From contig NW_026781981.1 in NCBI RefSeq assembly GCF_031769215.1, positions 806,001 to 870,000 of the forward strand: a stretch of 64,000 bases of DNA, in the 5' to 3' direction. Shown here piece after piece: positions 7,515 to 54,233 of this stretch; the stretch's first letter is position 1; every line of letters starts with the position of its first letter. This DNA comes from Ylistrum balloti (Eukaryota). Below the pieces are notes generated by a model. The model saw only the letters and a program-made list of their open reading frames with translations. It was not told the origin of the DNA and did no database searches. The position numbers and the translations under genes were made by a program.

Positions 7515-7561
7515 TTAACCAGTGTTGTTGACCAGCAAGGGAAGAAGCACCAGTGCTGCCA
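7515..7561 (-). CDS. GY1 coding exon 3: (L)AALVLLPLLVNNTG*
   Basis: Acceptor tatatttcag|TG at 7562/7561 is phase-compatible with the exon-2 donor. TAA at 7517-7515. A 3'UTR donor AAA|gtgagt follows 31 nt after the stop (7484/7483). Confidence 0.8.
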
Positions 7562-8214
7562 CTGAAATATACGTCTCAGATGCATTAAGTCTCAAACACG
7601 AGATAATGAACAGTTCGTAGTTAGATTATACAGCAATACTTGGGCAGGTGACAGGTACGGAAAATGCTAGGAACAAGTAGGTTGTTATAAAATAGGTATT
7701 GATAGATAGTACAAGATATTTAGAAAGGTAATTAAAGACATTATTACGGAGATTAAGTAGTACTTTGATGAGCGCCTGTCAATACAAATTTAGAATTATT
7801 CATAAGTGAAACAGAAATCAACTCTTTCGTATAGATGGCGCTACAGTAGCCAATGTGTTATAACCTTTGGCCTACGTAACCTTAGGCGATGACCCGAAAT
7901 GTATGGTTCGACGCTCCCTACGCTGTTTTTGTCTATCAGAATGATGGGCAACGGACCTGTCTGTGCTGACATGATTGTATTATTTGTGCACGATTCTTGC
8001 CCTTATCGCTAAGGACAGCATGCGTTCAGTGAGGTAGCCACCAATTACTACAATAAGACCCTGGCTGTTCATTTGGCGATAAATACAGCAAAGAAATAAA
8101 CACACATCAAACTGTTTGATGTCTAGGGACTTGTCACACAGCCTAAGAGTCTAAACTGTTGAAACCTAAAAGGTAACTGATCACATTTTTGTTAATACTT
8201 TTTGCAATACTTAC

Positions 8215-8584
8215 ATAGAAGGTACAGATAGTCATCATTTCCAGCATCAGCAGCCGCAGCAATAGCAGCACCAGGGGGTATTCTAGGTACTGGATAGGGT
8301 AAATACACTACCCTGTTTGGTATACCATGTCCTTTTCCTCCGTAACCCTTTCCATATCCATGACCATATCCTCCGTATCCTTTTCCATATCCGCCATATC
8401 CTCCATATCCGCCTTGTCCTCCATATCCACCGAATCCGCCATAACCATACATGTCATATCCTCCTCCATTTCCCCCTATAATGAAGCCATCGTGACCATA
8501 TCCGCCCCCATACTCGCCACCAAGACAGCAACCCACAGATATGAGAATTGTCAGGATCAGCAGAGCTAGGGTGGCAAATTTCAT
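8215..8584 (-). CDS. GY1 main coding exon: secreted Gly/Tyr-rich protein (138 aa spliced), shell-matrix-like composition
   Basis: MKFATLALLILTILISVGCCLG signal peptide, then GGYGGYG/GKGYG repeats, YLPYPVP and AAAA-DAGNDD. Acceptor gtcaacag|AG at 8592/8591; phase-1 donor CTAT|gtaagt at 8215/8214. Confidence 0.9.
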
Positions 8585-8812
8585 GATTCCTCTGTTGACA
8601 AATTAAAAGAACAAAAGAAAGTTTACATGATATAAAACCAATATAATTGCCTACAAGTAAAATATAATGACGAACATATTTACAATATTGAATTATTTAC
8701 ATTACATTCATTTAGAAAAGAAACCAATTCTAACAAATTATATAGTATAGCATCGTCTTTCATATTAAAGTGTATTAAGAAATGGAAATTCTGTATACTT
8801 ATTTTCACTTAC

Positions 8813-8867
8813 CTCTTTACACCGAAGGGTCCTGAATGTGGGGTATAGATGGTGGTGAGTATATATA
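8813..8867 (-). promoter_or_regulatory. GY1 TATA box and short non-coding exon 1
   Basis: TATATATA at 8867-8860 (minus strand) and donor AAAGAG|gtaagt at 8813/8812, the same layout as GY2-4. Confidence 0.65.
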
Positions 8868-10744
8868 CTACAAGAAATCAAGTGAACTCAAGTTGTCCTT
8901 CCCAAGTTTCCTCGATTAGAAAAAATTATGTAACCTGGTTGGTCAGTGAGTGTTTGTTTACCAGAAATACTCCCGTCTGAACTTTTAGCCTATGTGTTGA
9001 CGCAGACTTTATTTTAATACAATTGTGAGTCGTTAAAGCATAGAAATACGTATTCTGATTATAATATAGATATAATTTAGTATTGCAATTTAAGAAATTG
9101 ATTGAATTATGAAGTTATTGTTTCCCATCTGTGAGATTGATTCCAACCAATTTTGATTTTCCTCATGGATCCTCCAAGTTTCAACAACTGAGTCCCTCAG
9201 TATCATGGTCGAAATTATAATTTCCTGTCTTTATGTGAATTTTAAAAATGTCATTTATAATACCTGCGGAATTTAATGTTCAAAATGTTTCCGTGTGGAT
9301 GACCCGACACTCTACTACGTTAAAACGAAATAAGAACTAGAAGGAATACGTTTTGTTTATATCGTTTTGATAACTTACGGTATTTTTCGTTTGGATACTT
9401 ATTATTTAACTATCGTACTACCGAATTTTACAAAGTTTTAGAAAGTTGTATATTAAGAAAGAATCTCTATTTATGGCAAAATTGGTACACATCTACTGAT
9501 GCTTTAAAAATATGCTGAATGCTGGTACAGTATTGTTGGTATAAAACACATGCATTTGCACTCTTAAGCTTATAGAATAATAATCAATTGAAATATTTGT
9601 CGTAACAATAATTTGAATACAAGAGTCACGTCCATTGAAAATGAAATGAAAGTCAAACTGAACTATGCCCGTGTCCATGTATATAAAGAAAACAAACATA
9701 AAAATTGAGCGTTCTTTTCCTGCTTTTCCATGGGAAAAAAATGACGATGCTTAATTCTTAAAATTTAATTTATTGTTCAAGTTTAAATGCGTTGATACAT
9801 AATTCCTATTTTAAATATATAAATACAGCTATGAACTATCAATGTTTTTCTTTTAAGAGTACACATTGTGAAACATGTTTCAGTTAAACATGACGATAAC
9901 GATACGTACTATTAGCATAGTAATGTATACATGATATCATCTATTGTTGGCAGAGCATTTACACATCATTACTACACCATTACAAACACATTTTGACCGT
10001 TATTGAAGTACAAGTATGATGGATACATAAAGTAATTACCGACAATGATTTATCAAATATTATGATTTAACTAATAGATTCATCGGTATCATATCTTATA
10101 ATTTCCTATTACTAGCGCACTATTTACAACCTGTTTAGTACACGGTAGTGTGAACAACTGTATGTCATTAAATCTAGTGAAAAAGGGCAGAATACGGTGA
10201 ATGTACTAACAGCGCATAAGGAATGATATGTTACCATCACTGATAATTTCCACATTAACAGGAAAAGACACACAACTGAATATAACATTTTAATGCTAGT
10301 TTATAATTATATATAATAGAGTCAAACAATTAATTAAACCGAAATAAGTGACCAATAATGACATCAAAATGTTTATTCATGTTTTTAAGGTTTAGGTTTG
10401 TGCAGAACATATAACTGATATCGGCTAACCAATCTGAATGCGACATTATGATAAATGTCCAAAATATATCCTCCAGTTAACGAAATATACATGCATGATT
10501 TTCAGTCGATATGTACCGAGAGAGGTTTCCACCTCCAGGGAATGTCAATAACTAGTAGTCATGGCTGTCAATCATATCCTGTATGGGGAGATGATGTAAG
10601 ATAGTCTGTTAACGCGCAGTGTTTTACAATATCTGAATGCATGCACTGCACCAAAAATAAACATTATACTTAAGTAATTATTTTATGTAGTCGCAACTAA
10701 AGTTATAATATATAAAAAAAATGCTTCCAATTTTTTTCATGATG

Positions 10745-17128: not shown

Positions 17129-17453
17129 ATGATGCATCTTAAGTTTGCCCTTTCAACCATAACTCTTGCCCTTGTCCTTGGCTGTTGTCTCGGAGATGGC
17201 TATGGCAGCTATGGAGGGGGATATGACACGTACGGCGGAGCGATGTACGGAGGATATGGTGGTTACGGAAAAGGTTATGGAGGGGGATATAGCGGATATG
17301 GCGGATATGGCAAAGGATACGGAGGGAAAGGATACGGCCATCAAGAAAGGGCTGTGTATATTCCTTACCCTGTACCCGCTGGACCTGCACCAGGATTTGT
17401 AGCAGGAGCCGCCGCAGCAGAGTACAACGACGATAACAGTAATATACTGTTGT
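17129..17453 (+). CDS. GY2 main coding exon: secreted Gly/Tyr-rich protein (126 aa spliced)
   Basis: Acceptor ccttag|GATCAAC then ATG at 17129. Encodes MMHLKFALSTITLALVLGCCLG + GY repeats + YIPYPVPAGPAP + AGAAAAEYNDD. Phase-1 donor TTGT|gtgagt at 17453/17454. Confidence 0.9.
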
Positions 17454-17668: not shown

Positions 17669-17724
17669 TCGGAGGTGCCCTCTTGCTGCTGCTGCTGATC
17701 AATAATAACAACAACAGTGGATAG
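17669..17724 (+). CDS. GY2 coding exon 3: (F)GGALLLLLLINNNNNSG*
   Basis: Acceptor tttgttattttcag|TC, in frame, TAG at 17722-17724. 3'UTR donor GGAAG|gtagga at 17756/17757. Confidence 0.85.
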
Positions 17725-17870
17725 ACCATTTACCATGTAACGGACTATAACGGAAGGTAGGATGTTAAACTTATCATTTAAATCGAGGGTTTAAGTAAGC
17801 CTATTACCATTAGCGTCTATTTTATGTCATTACATGAACAAGCAACAATAAATTTAATTTTCTGTTTCAG

Positions 17871-17964
17871 ATTGACTTTCTTTGTGCGCGAGTCTCCTTG
17901 GCTGTTACCAAAGACCCCTGTGTGTTTGCGGTCATCATTTTACTTGTTAACATTCCTCAATAAA
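17871..17964 (+). other. GY2 non-coding terminal exon
   Basis: Acceptor ttttctgtttcag|ATTG, conserved motif at 17883-17920, AATAAA at 17959-17964. Confidence 0.75.
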
Positions 17965-21182: not shown

Positions 21183-21546
21183 GTAAGTTGGATTGGAGAT
21201 GGAAGATCCAATCATTAGTCAAGTAATGTGATCGTGGTATGAAAATATATCATTTTCTAAAATAGGAATGTGTTGCAAAAAATTAAAAAGTGATCCTAAA
21301 GTATATATTTTGTAACGAACATTAATCGATATTGCAAACTCTTCTTTGTATAAATTGTTAATTTTCTTCTATTAACCTCCAGGGGTAACCTTTACCTTTT
21401 CTAACTTGATGCTATATATATCCTTGATGACAGTGACTGTAACCCTAGATAAAAAAAATGTCTGGTTTCTTCCTGTAAACGTTGAATTTCTTCTAGAATC
21501 TCTGTGTATTCTGAAACAAGCTATAACTTCATACTTCAGGATCAAC

Positions 21547-21871
21547 ATGAATTATCTTAAGTTTGCCCTTTCGACCATAACTCTTGCCCTTGTCCTTGGC
21601 TGTTGTCTTGGAAATGGCTATGGTGGCTATGGAGGAGGATATGACATGTACGGCGGAGCGATGTATGGAGGATATGGTGGTTACGGAAAAGGCTATGGAG
21701 GGGGATATAGCGGATATGGCGGACATGGCAAAGGATACGGAGGGAAAGGATACGGCCATCAAGAAAGGGCTCTGTATATTCCTTACCCTGTACCCGCTGG
21801 ACCTGCACCAGGATTTGTAGCAGGAGCCGCCGCAGCAGAGTACAACGACGACAACAGTTATCTTTTGTTGT
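21547..21871 (+). CDS. GY3 main coding exon: secreted Gly/Tyr-rich protein (126 aa spliced)
   Basis: Acceptor cttcag|G at 21539/21540 and ATG at 21547 (MNYLKFALSTITLALVLGCCLG). Phase-1 donor at 21871/21872. Close paralog of GY2. Confidence 0.9.
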
Positions 21872-22120: not shown

Positions 22121-22176
22121 TCGGAGGTGCCCTCTTGTTGTTGCTGCTGATCAATAATAACAACAACAGTGGATAG
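22121..22176 (+). CDS. GY3 coding exon 3: (F)GGALLLLLLINNNNNSG*
   Basis: Acceptor ttattttcag|TC at 22120/22121; TAG at 22174-22176; 3'UTR donor at 22208/22209. Confidence 0.85.
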
Positions 22177-22322
22177 ACCATTTACCATGTAACGGACTAC
22201 AACGGAAGGTAGGATGTTAAACTTATCATTTAAATCGAGGGTTAAAATAAACCCATTGTCATTTTAGTCTATTTTATGTCATTTCATGAACTAACAACAA
22301 TATTTTTAATTTTCTGTTTCAG

Positions 22323-22417
22323 ATTGATTTTCTTTGTGCGCGAGACTACTTGGCTGTTACCAAAGACCCCTGTGTGTTTGCGGTCATCATTTTACTTATA
22401 TATCATTCCTGAATAAA
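22323..22417 (+). other. GY3 non-coding terminal exon
   Basis: Acceptor tttctgtttcag|ATTG, motif at 22335-22372, AATAAA at 22412-22417. Confidence 0.75.
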
Positions 22418-26128: not shown

Positions 26129-26462
26129 ATGTATTATCTTAAGTTTGCCCTTTCGACCATAACTCTTGCCCTTGTCCTTGGCTGTTGTCTTGGAAATGGC
26201 TATGGTGGCTATGGAGGCTATGGAGGAGGATATGACATGTACGGCGGAGCGATGTACGGAGGATATGGTGGTTACGGAAAAGGCTATGGAGGAGGATATG
26301 GCGGATATGGCGGACATGGCAAAGGATACGGAGGGAAAGGACACGGTCATCAAGAAAGAGCTCTGTATATTCCTTACCCTGTACCCGCTGGACCTGCACC
26401 AGGATTTGTAGCAGGAGCCGCCGCAGCAGAGTACAACGACGATAACAGTTATCTTTTGTTGT
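26129..26462 (+). CDS. GY4 main coding exon: secreted Gly/Tyr-rich protein (128 aa spliced)
   Basis: ATG at 26129 (MYYLKFALSTITLALVLGCCLG), with one extra YGG unit relative to GY3. Phase-1 donor TTGT|gtgagt at 26462/26463. Confidence 0.9.
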
Positions 26463-26468
26463 GTGAGT

Positions 26469-26471
<3 letters not shown>

Positions 26472-26666: not shown

Positions 26667-26719
26667 TCGGAGGTGCCCTCTTGTTACTGCTGCTGTTGAG
26701 TAATAACAACATTGGATAG
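26667..26719 (+). CDS. GY4 coding exon 3: (F)GGALLLLLLLSNNNIG*
   Basis: Acceptor ttgttattttcag|TC at 26666/26667; TAG at 26717-26719. Confidence 0.85.
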
Positions 26720-31349: not shown

Positions 31350-31399
31350 CTATCCAAAAGCATTAGTCGCCAGCAAGGGGAGGAAAAATAGGGCTATAA
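31350..31399 (-). CDS. GY6 coding exon 3: (L)IALFFLPLLATNAFG*
   Basis: Acceptor gtttttcctttcag|TT at 31400/31399; TAG at 31352-31350. Clear homology to GY1 exon 3 (LPLL). In frame only if the exon-2 frameshift is corrected. Confidence 0.7.
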
Positions 31400-31579: not shown

Positions 31580-31960
31580 CCATATTTAAGTAATGTATGA
31601 CTTCTAACACCGTAAGCAAGGCATGTTTGAATACTGTCACCGTATGCAGGCCATACATGATTTTTGACATCATAAGTAGGTCACATATTGATCGTGAGTA
31701 GGTCATGTAGAATCACCAACTCCAAATGTAATTATTCTGACCTCTAACACAGTATATAGGTCATTTATGACTACTGATGTCATAGTCACGTGGTATATAA
31801 CTGCTGGTATCATACATGTAAGTAGGTCATCTATTGACACAGTGAGTAGGTCATGTATGACTACTGATGCCATAAGTACGCTTTATATGATTTCTGTTAT
31901 CATAAGTAGGCCATGCATGACTTTCGAAACCATGATGAGGTTATGTAGGACCATTGTCAT
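31580..31960. repeat. Degenerate tandem repeat (cataagtaggtcatgtatgact-like) in GY6 intron 2
   Basis: Recurring agtaggtcat/ccat and gtatgact motifs. Confidence 0.6.
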
Positions 31961-31970
31961 GTGTACTCAC

Positions 31971-32204
31971 GGACGATCGCACGGTCCCTGTAGGTCGTAG
32001 ATGGCGGTGGTACCGGAGGCATATTGATATACTGGTAGTCGTAGTTCTGTCCATATCCGCGCTGTAGGCACTGCCGCCATTATAGCCTTTGTTATACATA
32101 TTGTTTCCATATCCACTATATTGGTTAGTATACCCATCGCAATATCCAGTCGCAATACAAAACACCAGAACCAAAAACAGGACTATGACAGTGGCAAACC
32201 TCAT
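31971..32204 (-). pseudogene. GY6 main exon, Gly/Tyr-rich paralog with a 1-nt frameshift at ~32059-32060 (pseudogene or sequence error)
   Basis: Reads MRFATVIVLFLVLVFCIATGYCDGYTNQYSGYGNNMYNKGYNGGSAYS, then AGC-GC-GGA. Restoring one base gives GGYGQNYDYQYINMPPVPPPSTTYRDRAIV and a phase-1 donor C|gtgagt at 31971/31970. Confidence 0.75.
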
Positions 32205-33376
32205 TTTAAGCCTCAAAAAATAAATAAATAAATAAATAAATAAAATGAATTGACAAATATGAAAAGTTACTTCATCCAGTCATTCACATCGAAATCGGAT
32301 CGTGCATTAATGTACTTAATTAAGATCTTCTATTAGTTATGTTATATATAGAATTAAATTGAGGTTAAATTAAAATGCTGAACAAGTATTGATAAGTATG
32401 CGTCAAATCCAATCATCAAAGTTATATAATCGACCATGTTATCTTCCACATCATCCAAGGATATAGACGAATATGCAGTCTGTTGTAAACATTACCAACG
32501 AGAGTCGTTGTGGAAGCCATTCACAGATAAACCCAGACAGCAATATTGGCTAGTTTTATCGTATTGATTAAAGTAATAAATGATATAAAATATCGATTAC
32601 GAAAAATCATTACCATACGTCCCTTTCATATTTATCATATTTCATATTATTTTGATTTTCAAAATTGAAAAATAGAACTTCTTCTATGGTAGAAAACTAT
32701 TTCACTCATTAAACCAATGTGTTACCAAATGATGTTGTAAGGCACAATAATGAAATAATTTTGAAGGAATACACTTTATAAAGACTACGACTTTAGCAGT
32801 CACTGTTGCTGTGTTTAATGTCCAGTATCGAGGTGATTGAAACGAAAGTTAAAGAAATTAAAGAGTTTAGATTATATGTTTTTGTATTCACGAATTCTTC
32901 ATAAAATAGAAATATAACAGGAAACAAATACATATTCGCGGTGAGCATAAGAAAGTTATTATCTTGCTTGATCACCTGTGAATCATACAAATCCATAATA
33001 AATTACCTATTCATACTTAGAATATCATTAGCATATGTAATTGATGAGTTTGAGCCATACCTTCCAAACTGGATGCTTCTGAAAGCTGCGGCCAATAAGT
33101 CCAACCAGTTTACAGCCTGTAGTGGTGTATTATCAGCATTCCACCAAGCTATGAGGAAATCCAGTGAGTATTACAAACAACGCGGACGTCGGAAGTTAGA
33201 GGTCAGAGAATGGTCAGTGTTAGGTACGTGGCATAAAGCTTTTCGCATCACTACAGTTTTCGCAAGATGCTACTTAGACGTATGAATAGAGAGTAATAAT
33301 TAAAATTAAAAAAGTAAAATTTTCAAACATAGTTTTAGCTGCAAAGATTTAAAGATAAATACAACACGCGATGACA

Positions 33377-36530: not shown

Positions 36531-36778
36531 ATTTGAATTGCGTATGATTTCTTTTATGACTTAATACCAGCAATTGTTTTCAAATAAGTATTATAAAAAG
36601 TGAGATACATGTTTAACTACAATAACAGATTTTGTGATAAATCTTAAAAATGAATTGTGCTTATCAAGTTATCCTTATATCATGACCACAGACGATTGAA
36701 AAGGAAATGAATGTTACATGTTCCATGCGTGTTAGATGTTACGATACCTTTGATAACACCAGTCGTTCAGCTTTGACT

Positions 36779-36840
36779 TTAATTCCTCGTTAAAGCAAAG
36801 AGAAATGCGAACGCTGAAATCAATGAAAACTGTTTAATAA
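36779..36840 (-). CDS. GY7 coding exon 3: (A)FAFLFALTRN* from acceptor 36813, or (V)IKQFSLISAFAFLFALTRN* from acceptor 36840
   Basis: Two in-frame cag acceptors 27 nt apart; TAA at 36781-36779; candidate 3'UTR donor AAAG|gtatcg 31 nt after the stop (36748/36747). Confidence 0.6.
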
Positions 36841-37110
36841 CTGAAGCAACAAGAAGAGAAGTCACAAGGATTTTCGACAGTATATTTAATTATTCAAATG
36901 TTTCTCTTTTTTCTTTATCACCGTAGGTCACACTTTTACACAAGTAGCAAAATGACTCCAAATATTATCATTAACAGGGACGAGAAGTTCCGAGACCAAC
37001 CTAACATTGATGTTCAGCCAGTATTCTAAAATAATTATCAGATATTGAAACCTAAAGCTAGCTTTCAGTTAATGATATTTAAAGGCAATTCGTATTATTT
37101 TCATTCTTAC

Positions 37111-37436
37111 CTCCTATAGCTGCAAGAAGCCCTATTCCGGAGCCATAAGGGGAGTCCGTATCCCGTCCCTGAAGTGTGAAGTCAGGAAGAGAAGCACCAG
37201 ACGATGGTAATATTGTCTGTGAATTGTAAGTGATCTGAGTACCTTTTCCGTTGCCACCTTTACCGCCGTATCCCTTGTAGCCAACATTACCACCATATCC
37301 GCTGTAGCTGCCCTTGCCACCGTATCCACTGTAGTAACCGCCTTTGCCACTGTTGCCACCGTAGCCACTGCTACCACCGTATCCAAAGGAGCCACAAACC
37401 ACAACCAGGATGCTGGATAAAATTACTATCCTAAAC
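37111..37436 (-). CDS. GY7 main coding exon: secreted Gly/Tyr/Lys-rich protein (120-129 aa spliced)
   Basis: Acceptor ctcatgtcttag|G at 37437/37436. Encodes (M)FRIVILSSILVVVCGSFG signal peptide + YGG/GGKG repeats. Phase-1 donor GGAG|gtaaga at 37111/37110. Confidence 0.8.
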
Positions 37437-37967
37437 CTAAGACATGAGAGAAAGTTGAATGTAACAGAAACACTTTATCCTACCTGTATTGTTACAAAAT
37501 GTTGTACATATTTCAATCACCATATAGCACAATTATCTAAACTAAAAAGACAATTCCTGTCACGAATTCACTAAAACACCAGAACAAAACCTATATTCTA
37601 CACTTTTAACTTTAAACGTATTTTGAAATGTCTATAATATCTCTGCATCCTTACTGAAATATAGATATAATTTTCGAACATTTGGGTATAATAATTGCAC
37701 TATAGTATGATAGACCATCACCATGATAAACATATGTAGCGTTTTGAATTTATCTTGTAAAAAACCATGCTTACTTAACTGTTAACAAGTTATTGATAGT
37801 TATTCGAATAGAAAAAGCGGCAATGTAGTTGATGAATACAAAATGTTAACTGTAAAATATCAAGACCTGTTGTGAACAAATATTTGTATTTCCCATATAC
37901 TCCATAACATTGGTACATTGTGCTATTGAAGACCTACTGCATTACCAAACAATACTTGTATACTTAC

Positions 37968-43439: not shown

Positions 43440-46400
43440 TTTGCAATTACTATCCTATCAATATGAGGATTTAGACAAATCGAAAGGACTTTATACCTAC
43501 TTCTTTATTTTGAATGTGTTGCAAAGTAATAGTCCTTACTTATTATAATTATATTTGTAGTTGAGGAAAGTAGATAAGGTGTACACAGCATTTCAGATAG
43601 ATTAAAGTGTAAGTAATTACATTAAATGTATTTACATGCCTATCTTCCTTGGTGTGTCATGGTTAGACTTTTCATAAAGTAATTATGTCTATAAAGACAT
43701 AGTTCTTTGAGATTAAATCAGTTTTCCAAATATATAAAAAATATTTTCACTATAGCTACTACTATTTCTGATCTCCAATGCATTAGATAATGTCACCATG
43801 ACACGCTAAATGAATAAATATCTTATGGAAATAGCTCGTTCTAGTTAATTGATAATTATAAACATGAATATTTTGGGCTTTTTTTATGCGCGTTTAGTTT
43901 AAAGGAATATTTTCTTTTCAAGGAACTTTGATACACATTAACAAACCTTGAGAAATCAGCACAATCAACCTTCATCAAATAAAACTAAAAGACAAAAAAT
44001 ATAAGTTATAACAAAGTCAACATCATGATCAGTACAGTATTAAAAATATATTATTCATAAATCATGAGCACCAAATGCACCTTGCCTACGAAGCGCAAAC
44101 TTTTTATCTTCAATAACTTGAAAAAGCGTCATGGCGGTGGTTGTGAAAAACCTGAAAAAAGTGTCATATCGGCAGGTGTGCTCGTGGGACGAACAGTCCA
44201 ATTCGGTGACGTCTAATGAGGTAAAGTGATGTTATATATTAAGACGATCTTGCCACAACGACAAGGATTAAAACAAAATTGATGTTCTGTTTGTAAGTTT
44301 TGTTTGTTTATAAGTGCTGTTAGTTGATATTTCAAACCAAGCCCCATGACTAGCTTCTTATCAACTCGCACGTACAGTGTTCTGTACGCTTACGTCATGT
44401 CGAGAATTCCGTAAAATATATTGTTCAAAATTAATCAATAGTTCAACCACACTGTGCTTCTTTTTTGAAATATATAGTAATCGTATTGTTATTAAAAAAT
44501 AAACTAAATTTGGATGCTTTTAAAATAGCGATTTGAAAGATCGCGGCATTATTTACGCAGAAAATTGCCGCTAGAGGGCTCTTTTCGATATTTCAGCCAA
44601 TGAGAAGGCCAGGATCGGTAAATTTTGTCTGAAAGGCCGTCGCAATAGGCTATTGGTACTGAGTGCGTTTAGCCTAAAAACGACCTGAATATGTTTATTA
44701 TGGTATACAAACTCTTTTTTTCACCTCCCCCTCTGGTTTTTGACATTTGTTTCGACCAATGTGGATTTCTCTCATCCTAAGTTCCAACATTATAAGTCCT
44801 ACTTTGGTCCTTAGCATCACTTACGATAGAATTGAATAAACGTACAAATGTAAGTTTATATACATCCCAAGTTGACTACTTTATTTCGGTGAGTTCCGAA
44901 AAAATTAGACAGCTATTTTTAGTCGTCGTATCTCAAAGTATCGCTTTTTTTTTGTTTGTTTTGTTGTGCTTTTTGTACATGTAGCCTGGTTTTTGATATA
45001 CATTGTCACTATTCTAAATGAAGTTCGGGATTGCACTATTTTTCGGAAAGAATTTTTCTGATCATGCTGGACCCTCGTTTGCCTAATACGGTCAAGGTAA
45101 CACAAAGAAACATCTGATGAAAATGCCCATTTATGTGAAGAGGTTAAAAATTTGCCTTTATTCTATTAGGTGAACGGTGATCGCCTCTAATTAATTATTT
45201 CCGTCTACTGCGAAAAAATTATTTTGAGTAGTTCTTTGTAGATTTGTTTACAGCGGTCAAGAGTAACCTTTGACATTTTACTCTTGCGCGATGACAATCA
45301 ACAACACTACTATGCCATGGATTTGATGGAGTTAGTTTATGGAATAAATCTGTTGGGAGACTCATGATATAATGTATACACAAAGTTTTTATTTAAAAAA
45401 ATGATCAAGACCGAACCCTTTCCTAAAATAGGTAATCTCAAGGCAATCAAATAACAGGAATTTGTATTTTCTCAATACAGCATATCAACATTACGTAAAG
45501 TGCTTGGATGTTTGATGGACTTAATAAAACACATTTGATGCCGTTGGTAGGAACTAAATGTTTTACAAATCCAGTTAGATAACCAACCACGGCAGAATTT
45601 ACGATATCAGCCATACAAACATTTGTCGGTCCTTGCAAATACAAAGTATACCTCTGAGAGATCACGAAGGCGATCATAAACTTTCCATTATCTTCTAAAA
45701 CCTTCATCTTTCGGAATCCTGAGTGAGTTTATGTATCAGTTGTGTGCATCCTTAACGGACATCAATATATTGGGCACAAGCCCTTGATGACTTGATATTT
45801 TCTAGGTATCTAGAAAAGAAAAATATTGATAAGAAAATCGAAATCATGACGGTTGGAGCCTAGTTGGAAGTTGTCCATGTTGATTATAGGGTTAGGGTAA
45901 GGGGCTGACGTACAAAAGTCAGACGTGTCTTTAATTTTCCAAAAATTGTTTCTCTAAATATCAACAGTCGGTTATCCTTATCTATCAATACCCACATTCC
46001 ACAATCAACGAACACCTTTATCCTCGGTTGTAAATGATGAGTGATTTTTGGTATAGATATATGGGTGTGAATTACATTAGAACGTACATGTGTGTTCCGT
46101 GTACATTTAAAGCCATCATGAAGTATACTGAGGATGGAAACATATGAATACTCCAAGTGTTAGTTGACAATTATTAAAGTTTGGAGGTAAGATCATCCAA
46201 CAGTCCATTAGCATATCAATGGGAAGTATACCCCTCTTTTGGCTGACCTTTCTTTCCATACCAGGCTGAAATGATCAAAGAACATAACAAAACAGCTTGA
46301 AAAGACCTTGCTAATCCTTTATTATGGCTTGATATTGTTAATAAGTGTAGTTTGGAATAGTAAACTTCGTCTTTATTTTCCTTTTTTGATATTCGGCTGA

Positions 46401-47519: not shown

Positions 47520-47595
47520 ATTATTTAATGACAAAAATACACAGGGGTTTTTGGTATTAACTGTAAGTGACGTTGTTGACCTCTTGCGCGAAAAC
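47520..47595 (-). other. GY8 non-coding terminal exon
   Basis: Acceptor tttttattcatttgtag|GTTT at 47596/47595, then GCGCAAGAGG and TACCAAAAACCCCTGTGT (47556-47539), then ATTAAA at 47529-47524. Confidence 0.7.
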
Positions 47596-47868
47596 CTACA
47601 AATGAATAAAAAAAATCATTTTAAACAAGGAGAGACTTTTTTGTATGGTTCATAATTACTGTAACCACTATTATGATAACTATACACGAAGTTAATCACG
47701 GAGTCAACGTTATGGATCTTCTGAAAATATCATAAGCATATTCAGTCATAAAGATCGGGTTCTGAATATCTTTAGAATACATTCATAGTAATTCAACAGT
47801 TAACAAAAGCATTTGACGTAATAAGACATAAATAACTTACCTATATACAAATCTGTTTGTTGTTTTAT

Positions 47869-47918
47869 CTAACCAGTGTTATTGTTGTTGGATAAGAGAG
47901 CCAGTAACAACACGGCTC
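47869..47918 (-). CDS. GY8 coding exon 3: (G)AVLLLALLSNNNNTG*
   Basis: Acceptor aatgtttcag|GA at 47919/47918; TAG at 47871-47869; 3'UTR donor ATAG|gtaagt 28 nt after the stop (47841/47840). Confidence 0.8.
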
Positions 47919-48208
47919 CTGAAACATTGATATCATCAAATATTATAGTACAAACGGAGAATAGAAAAAAAATATGTGAAAACGTAATGATCATATTATC
48001 TACACAGGCGTATAGGTCAGCGGACAGGCGTATAGGTCAGCTGACAGGCGAGGTCAAGGAAAAGCTAGTCTTGTAATATATCACAGTCTTAGCCAGGTTT
48101 GTAACATTTGTTTTAATGATTAGAAATTAAGAGCGACTCGTTCGACTTAAGAGAGGGAAATCATAAGTATATGTGTGTGATTGATACGGGATTGGAAGTA
48201 GTGCCTAC

Positions 48209-48537
48209 CTGCCAAAAGGAAAAAAATGTTGTTGTCGTTGCCGCCGAATGCTCCGCCTCCTCCATACAGTCCTCCGAGTGCTGCCAAAGGAAGATCTCCT
48301 GGTTCTGGGGATGCAACAGGATACAGTATGGTTGGAAAACCATATCCTCCTTGTCCTTGTCCATATCCGCTATATCCGCCATACCCCCCTCCTTTTCCGT
48401 ATCCTCCGTATCCACCATAGTAAGGTGCTACCATACCTCCTTTTCCGTAACCGCTGTACCTACTCATACAATAATGTCGGTGATCAAGAGTATTCGTACA
48501 TACTTTTGTCTAACAATATTAAACCAGTTGTTATGAC
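48209..48537 (-). pseudogene. GY8 main exon: Gly/Tyr-rich body intact, signal-peptide region decayed (pseudogene or leaderless variant starting at ATG 48467)
   Basis: Acceptor ccctatgtcag|GTCA at 48538/48537 is homologous to GY9 cag|GTCA. The first ~70 nt have stops in all frames. The frame is open from 48467 (MSRYSGYGKGG...GNDNNIFFLLA) to the phase-1 donor GCAG|gtaggc at 48209/48208. Confidence 0.7.
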
Positions 48538-50213
48538 CTGACATAGGGAATGGACGATAGTATATTATACTGCGCTGCAATGAACCGGGTTCAAAGGAAA
48601 ATGATATATTTAAAACATACTGCTACTGATGTATAATCAGACCGTTGTACTTTTGCAAAACAGCACCAGATACAGCACTTATATATAAAGTGCATCCTCG
48701 ATACTCCAGGGGTTACAATTATTTTCGCGCTCTGCACACCTGGAAAATGTCATGGCAAAATTGAAGGCACAAGCAAAGTTATTTAATTGGTTTCAGTAGC
48801 AAAATAGTGGTCAAACATAGGCTAATACGTTTCTTTTGAAGATTACAATGGCGCGACATCCAACTTCAAAGCTATTACAATATACTGTTATGCGACCTCG
48901 AGTTTCCTTTGATGTACATCAAAGGACAAAACTAATTTTTTCGTCTTGTCAACAAGGTGTCACACACGGATCCTTCAACTTTGCCAGGACAATATTCCAG
49001 CGGTAGAAAGAGCGAAAATGACCACTGTAACCCCTGTAGTAGCAAGGATACATAAAATGATATACTTATCAATACTAATTTCAGGGGGCATATTAGTTTT
49101 ATCGAAGTTGAATTTGAATTCAAAATCTGTCCATGTTTTCTTTGCTGATTTTGAAAAAAGAAAACAAAACACGAGATAAAGTTAAAGACGTTTCCAATCG
49201 TCGGCGATGTACTAATGCAACTGTGTCAGTACATAATTTGAAAATTGATTAATTAGAGGGTCAGGTTATGAATTTAATCTAAGCTAAAGACTAGAAGACA
49301 TGCTGGTTTGACACCTAGTATGTTTTGAATAATGATATTGCTACACCCGTCGACCTTAACAGTATTTAATTAGCGTATACCTAACAGGCTTTGGACTCGG
49401 AAGACGGTCATCATTGAAACGGTCAGATATGTAAGTTGAGAAGATGACAAGAAAAAGACATTTAAAGACAAAAAATATATTAACAATATTTTTTTGTTTG
49501 CAAGATGTTCTTAAAGATCAATTTACGTACATATTCTGGACGGGGTAGTATGACCCTCCGTATCCGTTACCCATCACCGCCACGGAGAGGCAAGCCAGCG
49601 AGGCAAGCACCGCACAAGCGAACCTCATTTTGAAAACTGCAATTAAAACAAACAAAATACTATTTGTCATAGTGATTAGTATTTTGCCGCCGATGAGTGA
49701 ATTTACACCAGTATAACATTATAAAGTTTATGTCATTTTTCTATTCTTTAATTTCAATGATTATCATAAAACATTTATGTTAACATTTATATCATAACTT
49801 TTTAAATATCCCGCGGTATAAAAAAAAAAAATAAAAAGGAAGTGAACACAATCAACTGTATCCCTTATTCTAGGAAACAAACATATATGAAAATTAAATT
49901 GATATATCGATGTAAAAAATGTTTTTATAGTTATTATGAAAGCAGCAAATTATAGCAAATTAAAACCATTTCCTTTTGCCTCTAAATACATTTTGCAGAT
50001 TTTTCTGGACTTATTTAAGACTTAAAACCTGGTTATAATATTTAATATGACTGAAATAAAACACTTTTGTAATAACTTTCATTCACATGCTATAAACAAA
50101 GAGGTGAAACATTAATATATATCAATAACCAGTAAGTTTTGATATCTAGACTACTTCGATACACAGATAATGTGAACGAAAAATAATTCAATGGTTGGTT
50201 AAAAGAACTGTAC

Positions 50214-50375
50214 CTGTGATCCTTTGGTGGAAGCGGGTCTGTAAAGGATGCTCTACTCCAAGTCAGAACCGCGGTTTTATATGCCTGGCCCCGAGGATGA
50301 GAAAATGTAGGTCGACCAGTTTCCTGTTATTTCCATATGGACTGATTCCGGCCTCCCTTAATCCATCATCTTTCT
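50214..50375 (-). promoter_or_regulatory. GY8 probable promoter and non-coding exon 1
   Basis: On the minus strand: ATTGG/CCAAT just upstream, AGAAAGATGAT at 50375-50365, TATAAAA at 50281-50275, and donor CACAG|gtacag at 50214/50213. Confidence 0.55.
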
Positions 50376-50724
50376 GACCAATCATTCCAACATGACAAGA
50401 TCGTTTATCGCATCGTGAGTGCGAATGCCAAAAATAAAGTTAAATATTATCATAGGTACTATCACAATTAACACAACACAGTTATAACCAGTTACAACAA
50501 ATCTTTATCATGTAGAACAGTATTCAATGTTATAATCATGTTAACCGTTACTGTATTAAAAAATTCGAACATGTTAACATAATCATAATCCAAATCCAAA
50601 ACAAAAGAAAAAAAATATATGGGGCATTATGGGAAAAAAAAGCAAGGATAATATCAGGTGTTAACATCAAATAATGAGATGGTAATAAGAGTATACGTTC
50701 GGTACCTTATAATGACAAAGCACG

Positions 50725-51110
50725 ACATTTAATATGTTTTGTTGATATTAACAGAACACATGATAATTGACAAAGTAACTGATATCAAATATGTTTTGAC
50801 GTAATAATTTAATATGTTTTGTTGATATTAACAGAACACATGATAATTGACATTAAATATGTTGTTGATATTAACAGAACACGTGGTAACTGATATCAAA
50901 TATGTTTTGTAACAGAACACGTAATAATTGACATGGATATGTTTTGTTGATATTAACAGAGCACATGATAATTGACATTAGATATGTTGATGATATTAAC
51001 AGAACACGTGGTAACTGATATCAAATATGTTTTGTAACAGAACACGTAATAATTGACATGAATATGTTTTGTTGATATTAACAGAACACGTGAAAATTGA
51101 TATTTAAGAA
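50725..51110. repeat. ~44-bp degenerate minisatellite (aatatgttttgttgatattaacagaacacatgataattgacatt)
   Basis: Tandem units are directly visible. Confidence 0.9.
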
Positions 51111-52696
51111 GTTGTGTTGACATTGAGAAATCTTGTGTGTAATGACATTAAATTCATTTTGCTGATCATAAGAGTACAAAACGTGCTCAATGGCATAAAA
51201 TGTAGTGTTGATAATTATTGTTCAGTAATTATTACAATAAACATTTACTATTATTTTGCTAATGAAAATCAATGTGATAATTGGCATTAGATATGTTCTT
51301 TTTATAATGACAGCGTGATAAATGTCATTGTTCTGATAATAATGATAATTTACATGGTAGTTGATTGTTATCAGTCGATTGATACGATAAATTCAAAACG
51401 CATCTTTCTGTCTTGTAGCGTTGATTGTAAAATGTTTTCAGTTCGATTTAAAAGTTTTGTGTTGTATTCCTGAGCGTTTGTTTTACCGTTACAATAATCA
51501 GATATGCAATATCGTATGTGGTGACAATAACAGTTTGAACATTGAAAAAAATAGACGAAAATGAGGAAATATCCTAATAAACTAATGGAGACGGACTTAA
51601 TGAAATAGATTATACAAAATTTATACTTTGATTATGTTTTATTTCCCTGTTGTATTTACTGACTGCTTTATCTGTACATGTATCTTTTTACATGATCGTA
51701 TTAACATGGTGATTTCAGAGGACCATTATTAACAAAGTGAATAGATAACAACACTACATTAAAACGGTATTGGGATTGTACAAAAGATACACAAGTGAAT
51801 AGCACATTTTTATATTTTAGAGTGAGATACAGTAGAGCCAAACAATGAATTAAACAGCATCATACAGTTGTTTCGTTCTTCTAGGACTCGTCAGTGATGA
51901 TAAGGGCATAAATTGTAAAGTCTAGGAGGCGACTAAGGAAAATCCAAAGTGATCAAAAGAAAAGTCAAAATCTCGACAGAGATGTGCATTAGCCCGATAA
52001 TTAAATAAATTTTGTACTTTTCATTCAGATATTCAGATATCAGATAATTTTAGAAAAATTGTCAAGTACGTGTGTATTTTCTGAACCGTGCTACTTTAGG
52101 ATAAACACGAAAACACAGTAAACATATATCTTTTAACATATGTATGTGTGACTGACATGCACCATGATGCGATTCGTGACCGCTTATTTTGCCTTTAGCA
52201 CCATTCCTTATGGCTGAAGATGATAAGCAAAACACATTTTTTTTTTCGTTTCATTATTAAATGACGTATTGCATTAAAGTGTGTGTTCCTGAAGCAACGA
52301 ATCATTTTTTTTAATAAAGACATCCCAGATCTTGGAGTTCTAAACATGAAGATACACAGGAGTTTTCATCATTTAGAAAGTTTAAAGTACTTAGTGTAAG
52401 AGAGAAGACCGTCTCTTTCATTTGATTAAGAAAATATAAATTTTAATAAATATGAAAAAAAAAAATTAAAATAATGAATCTTCAAACAGTACGATATTTG
52501 GATACGATAGAATACATTTTTTCCGTGGATGTTAAACGCTAAATAATTAAATATCAAATCTAAATCATGTAGTCGTAACCATGTCAAGACCACATACTCT
52601 GTCTTCCAGTCTGTCACGTAGCGTGTCCTATAGTATCTCACGTAGGTCAATAGTTTAAGTAACTGAGAGGTCGAATGATCGCGAAGATGACGGATG

Positions 52697-52871
52697 AGAA
52701 AGATGATTTCCTCAGGGGGGATGATGAACCATGAGGAAGTTGATTGAATTTTATCCTGCCATGATTGGTTTAAGGTCAGGGTATAAAAAGTACGACCTCC
52801 ACATCTAGTAAACCAGAATCCCTGAACAGGACGGGATCCTCATCTACATCACAGGGTCCTGTATCATAGGG
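52697..52871 (+). promoter_or_regulatory. GY9 promoter and non-coding exon 1
   Basis: AGAAAGATGAT at 52697-52707, ATTGG at 52764-52768, TATAAAA at 52782-52788, first donor AGGG|gtaagt at 52871/52872. Confidence 0.7.
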
Positions 52872-53542
52872 GTAAGTAAAACTCATCAATATCTCATGGT
52901 TCTGTAGCATAGGGGTAAGTAAGCGGTTAGGTTAAATCTATAACTTATAATCCTGTAGGGTAGGGGTAAGTAAAACTTATTTACATCTCAGGGTCCTGTG
53001 GCGTACGGTTAGGTTAAATCTGTAACTTATAGTCCTGTAGCTTAGGGATAAGTAATATTTATCTACGCCCTAGGTCCGTGTAGACAATTTTGATAAAATT
53101 ATAAAGTATGTTCCTACCCAGTACAGAATTAATGATATGTAGATATAAATAAAATGTCAATTTCTTTTAACGTTTTTTGCAGCAACGTAAGTTCCATGTG
53201 TAACCTTCGGTGTTGGGTTATACAGCGGGTGTTCTGTAAAATCTTGGTTTTATCATTGATGGAAACATGTTAATAATGTATCATTAGGTGGGGTTAGTAA
53301 TATATAACAATCATGATATCCGTTTATGCTTTTGAAAATATGTATAGTGGGAAGTTTCAGAATAATGTAACATCGAATCATGGTCATGATGTAGGGAAGG
53401 CGATACATGGTGATGTTAATAATTACTATAGTATATGTAAAACTTTTACGACGTATGTAAAATGGTGACTATCCTTATTATGATTTTATCGTCTGAATTG
53501 ATAAATTCTTTATTAACAAACCTTATAATGGCAGGTCACGAG

Positions 53543-53921
53543 ATGCGTTTGCTACTCATAGCAATCGCCTCCGGGGCGATCCTCATGGGATTGTTCACGG
53601 CGGTCAATTGTGATGGTGGGTACAGCGGGTACGGGTACGGCGGGTACAATGATTATGACATGTATAGTGGACAAGGGTACGGAGGATATATGTATCCAGG
53701 ATACGGTGGGCAAGGATACGGATATGGTGGAAAAGGATATATAGGATACTCGGGACAGGGATACAGCGGTTACGAAGGAAAGGGAGGAAAAGGTGGTGGC
53801 TATTTTGGCGGTAATGCATTGAGTGTACCTTATGGTCTACGTGTTCCGCCAATCGCCCCACCGCTCGGCTTAGACCAAAGTGGACTCTATGGTGCTAACG
53901 ACTCCTCGCTCTTTACTGTCA
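53543..53921 (+). CDS. GY9 main coding exon: secreted Gly/Tyr-rich protein (145 aa spliced)
   Basis: Acceptor atggcag|GTCACGAG then ATG at 53543. Encodes MRLLLIAIASGAILMGLFTAVNC signal + GYG/GQGY/GGKG repeats + VPPIAPP. Phase-1 donor GTCA|gtaagt at 53921/53922. Confidence 0.9.
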
Positions 53922-54174
53922 GTAAGTATTTGTATCAAAACTAAGGCACGTTATAGGTTAGATGGTTTCAATTAATCTGTATTTATCCAAATGTTTAATT
54001 GTTAGCAAGAGTATGTTAGAAATAATTGAAAGTAACACCGCGCCTGATAATGAAAACCGCATATCAAATAAATAAGCGTTGCTTTTAACTGATGAAGCAC
54101 AAGACCAAATAAACTTGAAATGTAAAATTTCATTGGATTCTGTTACTTATATAACATGTCGTTTCTTCTTGCAG

Positions 54175-54233
54175 TTGCTATCGGATTCCTGTTCTGGTTG
54201 ATTGCTAGTGGTGCCAGGAACAGGACTGGTTAG
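54175..54233 (+). CDS. GY9 coding exon 3: (I)AIGFLFWLIASGARNRTG*
   Basis: Acceptor tttcttcttgcag|TT at 54174/54175; TAG at 54231-54233; 3'UTR donor ATAT|gtaagt 34 nt after the stop (54267/54268). Confidence 0.85.

What the first reader, a model, noticed from the sequence alone, without database searches (positions are those of the whole stretch)
7515..54233. Exon-encoded C-terminal module: hydrophobic segment + N-x-S/T-G-stop (possible amidation, anchoring or glycosylation signal)
The spliced C-termini are: GY1 YLYLLLAALVLLPLLVNNTG*, GY2/3 (NI/YL)LLFGGALLLLLLINNNNNSG*, GY4 ...LLLLLLLSNNNIG*, GY6 IVLIALFFLPLLATNAFG*, GY8 IFFLLAGAVLLLALLSNNNNTG*, GY9 LFTVIAIGFLFWLIASGARNRTG*. Seven of eight end in Gly, and five end in a sequon-Gly (NNTG, NNSG, NNSG, NNTG, NRTG), although the GY-rich bodies have diverged strongly. 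A C-terminal Gly is the established substrate for peptidylglycine alpha-amidating monooxygenase. A 14-18-aa hydrophobic stretch near the C-terminus could be a short TM anchor, a GPI-addition signal or a self-assembly block. Which applies is unknown (inference). Acidic NDD/NDN/DAGNDD residues directly precede it in GY1-4 and GY8, giving an amphiphile-like layout.
Basis: partly seen in the sequence, partly recalled or inferred. Interest (0 to 1): 0.75.

Follow-up and report, generated by a model that had tools for sequence, protein, structure and literature searches.

The report
Conserved hydrophobic, Gly-ended tail micro-exon
A tiny, ancient exon gives a family of scallop and oyster glycine/tyrosine-rich secreted proteins a greasy C-terminal helix that always ends in glycine; it is probably a membrane anchor, or possibly an amidated tail, while the glycosylation motif next to it is not conserved.

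Summary
The window (saucer scallop, Ylistrum balloti) carries eight or nine four-exon genes for Gly/Tyr-rich proteins with a signal peptide. In each gene, a phase-1 intron is followed by a coding micro-exon of 35-59 nt. With the last codons of exon 2, this exon forms a 14-21-residue hydrophobic helix plus a 3-8-residue polar tail.

Gene models in Pecten, Mizuhopecten and Argopecten include the same exon. An oyster gene has it too, although its RefSeq model misses it. All 16 members compared end in Gly, with synonymous codon changes. The last 28 codons are under purifying selection like the rest of the protein (pN/pS 0.2-0.5, pS about 0.55-0.6).

The N-x-S/T sequon is present in only 9 of 16, and in one of four GY9 orthologues, so glycosylation is not the conserved function.

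I could not settle the mechanism. My estimates are:
- retained type-I membrane anchor, about 0.4;
- secreted amphiphile with a PAM-amidated end, about 0.28;
- GPI signal, about 0.17.

No RNA data were reachable. The family has no Pfam match and lacks the basic C-terminal signature of shematrins. This scan also noted Gly/Tyr-rich arrays on other pieces of the same genome, which I did not test.

Side finds: the stop codon lies 28-55 nt before a 3'UTR intron, and the last exon carries a very conserved linear motif.

The parts
8215..8584 (-). GY1 exon 2 coding part (signal peptide, Gly/Tyr body, Pro hinge, first 5 hydrophobic residues); phase-1 donor T|GTAAGT
   Evidence: Pecten orthologue P0002
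7484..7561 (-). GY1 exon 3 micro-exon: 47 nt coding (7515-7561, tail N-N-T-G-stop) plus 31 nt of 3'UTR before the GTGAGT donor
6684..6762 (-). GY1 exon 4 (3'UTR) up to the AATAAA signal, with the CGCGAGA...ACCAAAGACCCC motif
17129..17453 (+). GY2 exon 2 coding part
17669..17756 (+). GY2 exon 3 (coding to 17724, tail N5-S-G-stop; 32 nt to the GTAGGA donor)
17871..17964 (+). GY2 exon 4 (3'UTR to AATAAA)
21547..21871 (+). GY3 exon 2 coding part. RefSeq XP_060064266.1 starts at an upstream in-frame ATG (21427), probably inside intron 1.
22121..22208 (+). GY3 exon 3 (coding to 22176)
22323..22417 (+). GY3 exon 4 (3'UTR)
26129..26462 (+). GY4 exon 2 coding part; intron 2 holds a (CT)n microsatellite
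26667..26719 (+). GY4 exon 3 coding part (tail N-N-N-I-G, no sequon); the downstream donor is mutated GT to TT
31941..32216 (-). GY6 exon 2; the window has a 1-nt frameshift near 32058 that contigs of three other runs lack
31350..31399 (-). GY6 exon 3 coding part (tail T-N-A-F-G-stop); donor 44 nt after the stop
37082..37474 (-). GY7 exon 2 (no Met in the ORF, so the start lies in an upstream exon); donor GGAG|GTAAGA
36748..36813 (-). GY7 candidate exon 3 (hydrophobic, ends T-R-N-stop, 31 nt to the GTATCG donor); the only member that does not end in Gly
49531..49628 (-). GY8 exon 1 coding part (signal peptide)
48209..48459 (-). GY8 exon 2
47841..47918 (-). GY8 exon 3 (coding 47869-47918, tail N4-T-G-stop; 28 nt of UTR holding TGTATATA; GTAAGT donor). 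The RefSeq model skips it, but it is conserved in three other genera.
47524..47595 (-). GY8 exon 4 (3'UTR), 84-95% identical across four genera
46216..46265 (-). Alternative terminal exon used by RefSeq XP_060064269.1; not conserved in Pecten, Mizuhopecten or Argopecten
53543..53921 (+). GY9 exon 2 coding part
54175..54267 (+). GY9 exon 3 (coding to 54233, tail R-N-R-T-G-stop; 34 nt of UTR with TGTATATA; GTAAGT donor)
54859..54946 (+). GY9 exon 4 (3'UTR), 84-89% identical across four genera

Best explanation
Exon 3 is a real, translated and ancient penultimate exon. With the last 4-6 codons of exon 2 it builds a 14-21-residue hydrophobic alpha-helix. The helix sits 3-8 residues from the C-terminus of an otherwise disordered Gly/Tyr-rich protein that has a signal peptide.

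The most likely reading is that the helix stays in the mature protein and acts as a stop-transfer membrane anchor (type I: body outside or in the lumen, short polar tail in the cytosol). This would tether the aggregation-prone Gly/Tyr chain to the secretory-pathway or apical membrane of the secreting cell, possibly until it is released by cleavage near the invariant Asn-Asp boundary.

Shown here: the exon and its splice sites, its conservation from oyster to scallops, purifying selection on it, and the helix prediction.

Inferred: membrane insertion, topology, tissue and role. Under this reading the invariant terminal Gly has no explanation.
For: Gene structure and splice phase.

The same micro-exon is present in annotated models of Pecten, Mizuhopecten and Argopecten, and in an unannotated oyster exon.

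Selection: pS is 0.54-0.61 in the last 28 codons, with pN/pS of 0.20-0.49, about the same as the rest of the protein.

AlphaFold2 predicts only two helices: the signal peptide (residues 3-23) and the C-terminal segment (133-151). The rest has pLDDT below 50.

The hydrophobic cores are 14-21 residues long. Their 15-residue windows sum to -1.4 to -4.4 kcal/mol on the Hessa 2005 scale (values from memory, a rough estimate).

Residue-specific conservation inside the helix argues that it is kept in the mature protein rather than discarded. L-P-L-L is shared by oyster, GY1, GY6 and the Mizuhopecten GY6-like gene, and G-F-L-x-W-L-L-A is shared by all four GY9 orthologues.

Charge layout: the GY9 and GY7 tails carry Arg after the helix, and acidic/Asn residues precede the helix. 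This matches the usual distribution around type-I membrane spans (established knowledge).
Against: Most tails have no Lys or Arg after the helix, so the positive-inside rule is met only in GY9 and GY7.

Several cores have only 14-16 residues and contain a Pro, which is short for a plasma-membrane span.

A cytosolic tail gives no reason for an invariant terminal Gly, nor for the Thr/Asn conserved through synonymous codon changes in the GY8 lineage.

No transmembrane or GPI predictor could be run, and there are no RNA, proteomic or localisation data.
Confidence: 0.4

Rival explanations
1. Secreted amphiphile with an amidated end. The C-terminal helix is fully translocated. Peptidylglycine alpha-amidating monooxygenase removes the terminal Gly and leaves an uncharged amide. 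The protein would then be a natural surfactant: a disordered Gly/Tyr head, an acidic collar, a greasy helix and a neutral Asn-rich cap. It would self-assemble or insert into membranes or a hydrophobic matrix after secretion.
For: Terminal Gly is present in 16 of 16 members across at least 7 paralogue lineages and an oyster. The third codon base varies (GGT/GGA/GGC), while the neighbouring positions vary in residue (T, S, I, F, V, L). This is the pattern expected for a PAM substrate: Gly is obligatory and the penultimate residue is tolerant (established knowledge). Of the readings considered here, only this one gives a specific reason for the invariant Gly. A segment this close to the C-terminus reaches the translocon only after termination, so integration is not guaranteed (inference).
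Against: A Leu-rich 15-20-residue segment following a lumenal domain would normally stop transfer, which would put the Gly in the cytosol, out of reach of PAM. No dibasic or other processing site is present. GY7 ends in Asn. No mass-spectrometry data are available. Gly makes up 35-40% of these proteins, so composition alone raises the prior for a terminal Gly.
Confidence: 0.28
2. GPI-attachment signal. A small-residue omega site in the Ala/Gly-rich stretch is followed by an Asn/Asp spacer and the hydrophobic tail. The tail is cleaved off in the ER and replaced by a glycolipid anchor.
For: The layout matches the classical GPI signal in GY1, GY2-4, GY8 and the oyster gene: an N-terminal signal peptide, A/G/N/D-rich candidate omega sites 6-10 residues before the hydrophobic core, a polar spacer, and a core of marginal length 14-18 with no basic stop-transfer flank (established knowledge of GPI signals).
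Against: The hydrophobic core is followed by a conserved polar tail of 3-8 residues, up to N5-S-G and S-G-A-S-S-R-T-G. Cleaved signals are not expected to conserve a Pro, a Trp or the last residue for hundreds of millions of years. The GY9 lineage offers no good omega/omega+2 pair at the right distance. No predictor was run.
Confidence: 0.17
3. The conserved function of the tail is N-glycosylation at the N-x-S/T sequon next to the C-terminus.
For: The sequon with Asn at position -4 is present in 9 of 16 members, including the oyster gene.
Against: The sequon is absent in Pecten, Mizuhopecten and Argopecten GY9, Mizuhopecten GY8 (S-N-T-G), GY4, GY6 and the Mizuhopecten GY6-like gene. In an Asn-rich tail with Ser/Thr a sequon arises easily by composition. 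If the helix spans the membrane, the sequon is cytosolic.
Confidence: 0.05
4. Exon 3 is an optional cassette. The main products skip it or retain intron 2 and are plain soluble proteins, so the tail matters only in a minor isoform. This does not exclude the other readings.
For: The RefSeq model of Y. balloti GY8 skips exon 3. The oyster model reads through the donor. Skipping in GY3 would end the protein one codon later. No RNA evidence was available to settle the point.
Against: Coding constraint on exon 3 equals that of the body. Its acceptor and both donors are conserved in four genera. The substitute exon used for GY8 is not conserved. The frame through exon 4 after skipping is interrupted in Argopecten. 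Ten of 11 models include exon 3.
Confidence: 0.1

Closest known systems
Shematrins and KRMPs (Gly/Tyr-rich shell-framework proteins of pearl oysters)
   Same: Signal peptide, GnY-type low-complexity body, bivalve origin. RefSeq names two window genes 'shematrin-like protein 1' and the oyster relative 'shematrin-like protein 2'.
   Different: Shematrins and KRMPs are recognised by a basic C-terminal signature (RKKKY, RRKKY, RRRKY and similar; PMC3896809). The proteins here end in a hydrophobic helix plus an Asn/Ser/Thr tail and Gly. They also share a Pro hinge (V/A-Y-I-P-Y-P-V-P type) that I could not compare with Pinctada sequences. No Pfam family covers either group.
GPI-attachment signals, e.g. 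classical plant arabinogalactan proteins (small low-complexity secreted proteins with a C-terminal GPI signal; from established knowledge)
   Same: N-terminal signal peptide, short disordered low-complexity body, small-residue region, polar spacer, hydrophobic stretch of about 15 residues near the C-terminus without a basic flank.
   Different: The hydrophobic stretch does not run to the end. A 3-8-residue polar tail with an invariant last Gly follows it, and specific residues inside the helix are conserved.
Zona-pellucida-domain matrix precursors, including molluscan EGF-ZP shell proteins (PMC9290575 appeared in the paper searches but was not read; mechanism from established knowledge)
   Same: Extracellular matrix proteins made as C-terminally membrane-anchored precursors. 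In ZP proteins the anchor prevents premature assembly and is removed by cleavage.
   Different: There is no ZP domain, no furin-type site and no sequence similarity. This is an analogy of mechanism only.
Gly-terminated precursors of amidated peptides (PAM substrates: melittin, cecropins, conotoxins; glycine-rich spider peptides such as ctenidins, from memory)
   Same: A stop codon directly after an obligatory Gly, a tolerant penultimate residue and a hydrophobic helical C-terminal part. RefSeq calls the Pecten GY8 orthologue 'ctenidin-1-like'.
   Different: That name rests on composition only. No propeptide cleavage site is present. The hydrophobic stretch is long enough to act as a membrane span, which would hide the Gly from PAM.

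Membership tests
Type-I single-pass membrane protein | Cleavable N-terminal signal peptide | tested here: inconclusive
   Hydrophobic N-terminus ending in small residues (C-C-L-G, V-N-C). AlphaFold2 predicts a helix at residues 3-23. SignalP was not available.
Type-I single-pass membrane protein | Hydrophobic helix long enough to span a bilayer (about 17-23 residues) | tested here: inconclusive
   Cores are 14-21 residues: GY9 lineage and oyster 20-21, GY1/GY2/GY6 14-16 with a Pro in GY1 and GY6. AlphaFold2 predicts a 19-residue helix.
Type-I single-pass membrane protein | Basic residues on the cytosolic flank (positive-inside) | tested here: not met
   Only the GY9 lineage and GY7 have Arg in the tail. 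11 of 16 tails have no Lys or Arg. This feature is frequent but not obligatory.
GPI-anchored protein (attachment signal) | Omega site with small residues at omega and omega+2, followed by a polar spacer of about 5-10 residues | tested here: inconclusive
   By-eye candidates exist in GY1, GY2-4, GY8 and the oyster gene. The fit is poor in the GY9 lineage. No predictor was run.
GPI-anchored protein (attachment signal) | Hydrophobic stretch that runs to, or almost to, the C-terminus | tested here: not met
   Every member has a 3-8-residue polar tail after the core, 7-8 residues in GY2/3, oyster, the Mizuhopecten GY6-like gene and the GY9 lineage if S-G-A is counted.
GPI-anchored protein (attachment signal) | Release by PI-PLC, or ethanolamine-phosphate on the new C-terminus | not testable with these tools
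   Needs a bench experiment.
PAM (amidation) substrate | Gly as the last residue of the precursor, or Gly followed by basic residues | tested here: met
   16 of 16 members end in Gly-stop, with codons GGT/GGA/GGC. The GY7 candidate is the exception.
PAM (amidation) substrate | C-terminus exposed in the lumen of the secretory pathway | not testable with these tools
   This depends on whether the helix integrates into the membrane. No topology data are available.
N-glycosylation site | N-x-S/T sequon conserved among orthologues | tested here: not met
   Present in 9 of 16; lost in three of four GY9 orthologues and in Mizuhopecten GY8.
Shematrin / KRMP family | Signal peptide plus a Gly/Tyr-rich repeat body | tested here: met
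   This is similarity of composition only.
Shematrin / KRMP family | Basic C-terminal signature (RKKKY, RRKKY, RRRKY, RKYKY and similar) | tested here: not met
   The signature is quoted from PMC3896809. The spliced proteins here end in a hydrophobic helix plus a polar tail and Gly.

The most novel reading that the evidence does not exclude
The tail is retained, lumenal and amidated. These shematrin-like proteins would then be natural protein surfactants: a disordered Gly/Tyr head, an acidic collar, a Pro-kinked greasy helix and an uncharged Asn-rich amide cap. They would organise at a membrane-matrix or organic-mineral interface. Alternatively, cleavage at the invariant Asn-Asp boundary could release a temporin-like amidated hydrophobic peptide. 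Either would be a C-terminal module not described for bivalve matrix or defence proteins, conserved since oysters and scallops split.
Probability: 0.22. Interest if true: 0.7.

Novelty: new variant of a known kind. Interest (0 to 1): 0.45.

Why it matters
Gly/Tyr-rich 'shematrin-like' proteins are usually treated as plain soluble building blocks of shell, periostracum or ligament. A hydrophobic C-terminal helix with an invariant Gly end, conserved between oysters and scallops and under selection, would mean these proteins are made either membrane-tethered or as amphiphiles. That would change how their secretion, assembly and extraction should be studied.

The work also shows that current gene models can miss or skip this micro-exon (Saccostrea XP_062616168.1, Y. 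balloti XP_060064269.1). Surveys of 'secreted, no transmembrane segment' mantle proteins may therefore misclassify the family.

The gene layout gives an entry point for post-transcriptional control of these genes. The stop codon lies 28-55 nt before the last intron, and the last exon carries a near-invariant 3'UTR motif.

Tried and rejected
- RNA evidence. Two run searches found only DNA-type assemblies. Laying their contigs gave no splice joints, only polymorphisms. Loci of other species cannot be given to the reads tools, so splicing rests on annotation and conservation.
- Exhaustive HMM search with a C-terminal profile (A2). It found only three window genes and one Pecten protein. The fifth hit (P0005) is an unrelated repeat protein.
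- Word search with the Pecten C-terminal region alone. It found only the query itself.
- Pfam, Rfam and the ESM Atlas gave nothing usable.
- Literature. No paper cites the accession numbers. No paper combined shematrin with a hydrophobic C-terminus or its exon structure. A wider search that included GPI and transmembrane terms, and the two papers I opened for it, gave nothing on this family.
- Exon 4 as coding sequence of an exon-3-skipped isoform. Rejected: the frame has a stop in Argopecten, and substitutions are not biased to third codon positions.
- A conserved RNA fold in exon 4. None was predicted.
- Terminal Gly as a nucleotide-level constraint. Rejected because the third codon base varies.
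- Sortase-like or legumain-like transpeptidation of an Asn-x-x-Gly tail. Considered and dropped because the GY9 lineage has no Asn there.

Full report
**What the window is.** It is AT-rich DNA (about 33% G+C) from the saucer scallop Ylistrum balloti. The window carries eight or nine genes for small Gly/Tyr-rich proteins: GY1 (-), GY2-4 (+, near-identical), a GY5 fragment (+), GY6 (-), GY7 (-), GY8 (-) and GY9 (+). A single-exon nicotinic-receptor-like ORF lies at 60617-61828.

**Checking the observation.** All the quoted C-termini are present where stated. In every gene the Gly/Tyr exon ends at a GT donor in phase 1.
- N-x-[ST]-G-stop occurs 7 times in six frames against 1.7 expected, and five of those sit in the right place.
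- A generic 'hydrophobic + G-stop' pattern is common by chance in this DNA. The evidence therefore lies in position, phase, splice sites and conservation.
- GY7 has a candidate micro-exon that ends T-R-N. That makes it the one non-Gly member.

**Gene architecture.** Aligning GY2, GY3 and GY4 shows four exons:
- a TATA box and a 5'UTR exon 1;
- exon 2, which holds almost all of the coding sequence;
- exon 3, with 53-56 coding nt plus about 32 nt of 3'UTR;
- an intron of about 110 nt, then exon 4, a 3'UTR exon with AATAAA.

GY8 differs in that its signal peptide lies on a separate exon 1. The 'C-terminal exon' is therefore the penultimate exon. In 15 of 16 genes examined across species, a consensus donor lies 28-55 nt after the stop codon. 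That is inside the distance at which a downstream exon junction is generally held not to trigger nonsense-mediated decay (established knowledge). The hydrophobic segment itself is split: its first 4-6 residues are the last codons of exon 2. Exon 3 is therefore not a self-contained module.

**Relatives.** A full-length profile search added six proteins:
- GY9 orthologues in Mizuhopecten, Argopecten and Pecten;
- GY8 orthologues in the same three genera;
- a GY6-like pair in Mizuhopecten;
- an oyster (Saccostrea) 'shematrin-like protein 2'.

The Mizuhopecten GY9 orthologue has the same sequence in the authors' own annotation (OWF52621.1) and in RefSeq.

I fetched the loci and mapped the proteins. 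Every scallop model has a coding micro-exon of 44-59 nt after a phase-1 intron. GY8 and GY9 lie head to head in all four genera. The oyster model reads through the donor. The true micro-exon lies 188 nt downstream and ends N-N-N-N-T-T-G-stop, followed by 36 nt and GTAAGT. The module therefore predates the split of oysters and scallops.

One model disagrees. Y. balloti GY8 (XP_060064269.1) skips exon 3 for an exon at 46216-46265. That exon has no counterpart in the other genera, whereas exon 3 and the real exon 4 (47524-47595) do.

**What is and is not conserved.** In the 16 spliced proteins:
- The last residue is Gly in all 16. Its codon is GGT, GGA or GGC; within the GY8 lineage alone all three occur. 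The constraint is therefore on the amino acid.
- In the GY8 lineage the preceding Thr and Asn are also kept through synonymous changes.
- The sequon is present in only 9 of 16. Among the four GY9 orthologues only Y. balloti has it; the others end S-S-R-T-G, S-T-R-V-G and S-S-R-I-G. Mizuhopecten GY8 ends S-N-T-G.
- An Asn-Asp pair just before the helix is invariant in the four-sequence alignment A3.
- Inside the helix, L-P-L-L is shared by oyster, GY1, GY6 and the Mizuhopecten GY6-like gene. G-F-L-x-W-L-L-A is shared by all GY9 orthologues.
- Between genera pS is about 0.55-0.6. pN/pS of the last 28 codons is 0.37 (GY9), 0.49 (GY8) and 0.20 (GY1), about the same as the whole protein (0.32-0.38).

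Exon 3 is therefore translated and constrained.

**Physical character.** AlphaFold2, run with the family alignment, predicts only two helices: the signal peptide (3-23) and the C-terminal segment (133-151, pLDDT 62-67). Everything else is disordered. Hydrophobic cores are 14-21 residues and tails are 3-8 residues. Summed Hessa-2005 values (from memory, without position weighting) are clearly negative for 15-residue windows and near zero or positive for 19-21-residue windows. The segment is strongly hydrophobic but short.

**Mechanism.** Three readings remain.

(a) Retained type-I anchor. This fits the helix, the acidic outside flank, the Arg in the GY9 and GY7 tails, and the residue-specific conservation. 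It leaves the invariant Gly unexplained, and most tails lack basic residues.

(b) Secreted, amidated amphiphile. Of the readings considered here, only this one gives a specific reason for the invariant Gly, because PAM requires Gly and tolerates the neighbouring residue. It needs a Leu-rich segment to escape membrane integration.

(c) GPI signal. The overall layout fits in several lineages. However, the polar tail after the core, the poor omega candidates in GY9, and the conservation of Pro, Trp and the last residue all argue against a discarded signal.

I give these 0.40, 0.28 and 0.17. Glycosylation as the conserved function gets 0.05. None of the three could be tested further, because no transmembrane, GPI or signal-peptide predictor and no RNA or proteomic data were available.

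**Comparison with known families.** RefSeq names such as shematrin-like, keratin-associated, pupal cuticle, ctenidin-like and sulfur globule protein reflect composition only. Shematrins and KRMPs are recognised by a basic R/K-rich-Tyr C-terminus (PMC3896809), which these proteins lack. There is no Pfam match.

An exhaustive search with the hinge-plus-tail profile found nothing beyond this family among 1.84 billion representatives. The profile was short, though, and it missed even the GY8 and GY9 orthologues of the other scallop genera. Absence elsewhere is therefore weak evidence.

**Side observations.**
- The first 50 nt of the last exon carry two near-invariant blocks, CGCRAGA and ACCAAANNCCCC, in all paralogue lineages and all four genera. 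Identity is 84-95% where neutral sites are about 45% diverged. No conserved fold was predicted.
- All eight GY8 and GY9 genes have UGUANAUA, the Pumilio-type consensus, directly before the exon-3 donor.
- The GY6 frameshift is absent from contigs of three other runs, which carry an extra G after 32058.
- GY4 has lost its exon-3 donor and its sequon.

**Verdict.** Anchoring and amidation both remain open. The family is already annotated but uncharacterised, and the tail module has not been described in the literature I could search.

Noticed in passing
window 6684-6762(-), 17871-17964(+), 22323-22417(+), 26869-26958(+), 47524-47595(-), 54859-54946(+); L001:11550-11639, L002:11628-11730 and 5608-5706, L003:12182-12284 and 5172-5270, L004:11935-12037 and 2435-2533: The last (3'UTR) exon of every family member starts with two near-invariant linear blocks, CGCRAGA and ACCAAANNCCCC. 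They are 84-95% identical between genera whose synonymous sites are about 55-60% different. RNAalifold predicts no conserved fold and there is no Rfam match. It is probably a binding site for a protein or small RNA.
   Followed up: partly
window 47842-47849(-), 54259-54266(+); same position in L002, L003, L004: UGUANAUA (Pumilio-type recognition consensus) lies at or within a few nt of the exon-3 donor in all eight GY8 and GY9 genes of four genera. The Pecten GY1 orthologue has one right after its stop codon.
   Followed up: partly
all family genes (window, L001-L006): The stop codon sits in the penultimate exon, 28-55 nt upstream of the last exon junction, in 15 of 16 genes. This is within the distance usually considered safe from nonsense-mediated decay.
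   Followed up: yes
window 32058 (GY6 exon 2, minus strand): Contigs of three other DNA runs from two studies carry one extra G here. That removes the frameshift seen in the window, so the GY6 break is an assembly error or a rare allele.
   Followed up: yes
window 26463-26666 and 26752-26753: In GY4, intron 2 holds a long (CT)n microsatellite, the donor after exon 3 is TT instead of GT, and the tail has lost its sequon (N-N-N-I-G). The copy may be decaying.
   Followed up: partly
window 46216-46265(-); L005:10001-10420: Two RefSeq models miss the micro-exon. Y. balloti XP_060064269.1 splices to a non-conserved exon. Saccostrea XP_062616168.1 reads through the donor into the intron.
   Followed up: yes
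window 8195-8214(-) and the equivalent intron starts in L001, L002, L004, L006: Reading through the phase-1 GTAAGTAT donor gives x-K-Y endings: C-K-Y-C-K-K-Y-stop in GY1, R-K-Y-S-stop in Pecten GY1, S-K-Y-stop and G-K-Y-stop in GY9 orthologues. These resemble the basic Tyr-ended signature of shematrins and KRMPs. This is probably a by-product of the donor consensus. It may still be worth testing whether basic-tailed shematrins arose by loss of this splice.
   Followed up: no
window 47841-54267; L002, L003, L004: GY8 and GY9 lie head to head in Ylistrum, Pecten, Mizuhopecten and Argopecten. Accession numbers suggest that the whole array is syntenic.
   Followed up: partly
window 21427-21546(+): RefSeq XP_060064266.1 (GY3) starts at an upstream in-frame ATG, inside what the paralogue alignment suggests is intron 1 and the 5'UTR. 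This adds 40 residues before the signal peptide. It suggests that the Y. balloti models were built without transcript support.
   Followed up: partly
window 13652-14173 and 15340-15866: Two tandem-repeat blocks with a period of about 42-45 nt, open in several frames, lie between GY1 and GY2.
   Followed up: no
window 30537-30930: Contig depth here is about ten times that of the surroundings in four DNA runs, which indicates a dispersed repeat next to the GY5 fragment (30151-30279).
   Followed up: no
window 60617-61828(+): An intron-less ORF of 404 codons has neurotransmitter-gated ion-channel ligand-binding and membrane domains (Pfam E = 1e-41 and 3e-13).
   Followed up: no
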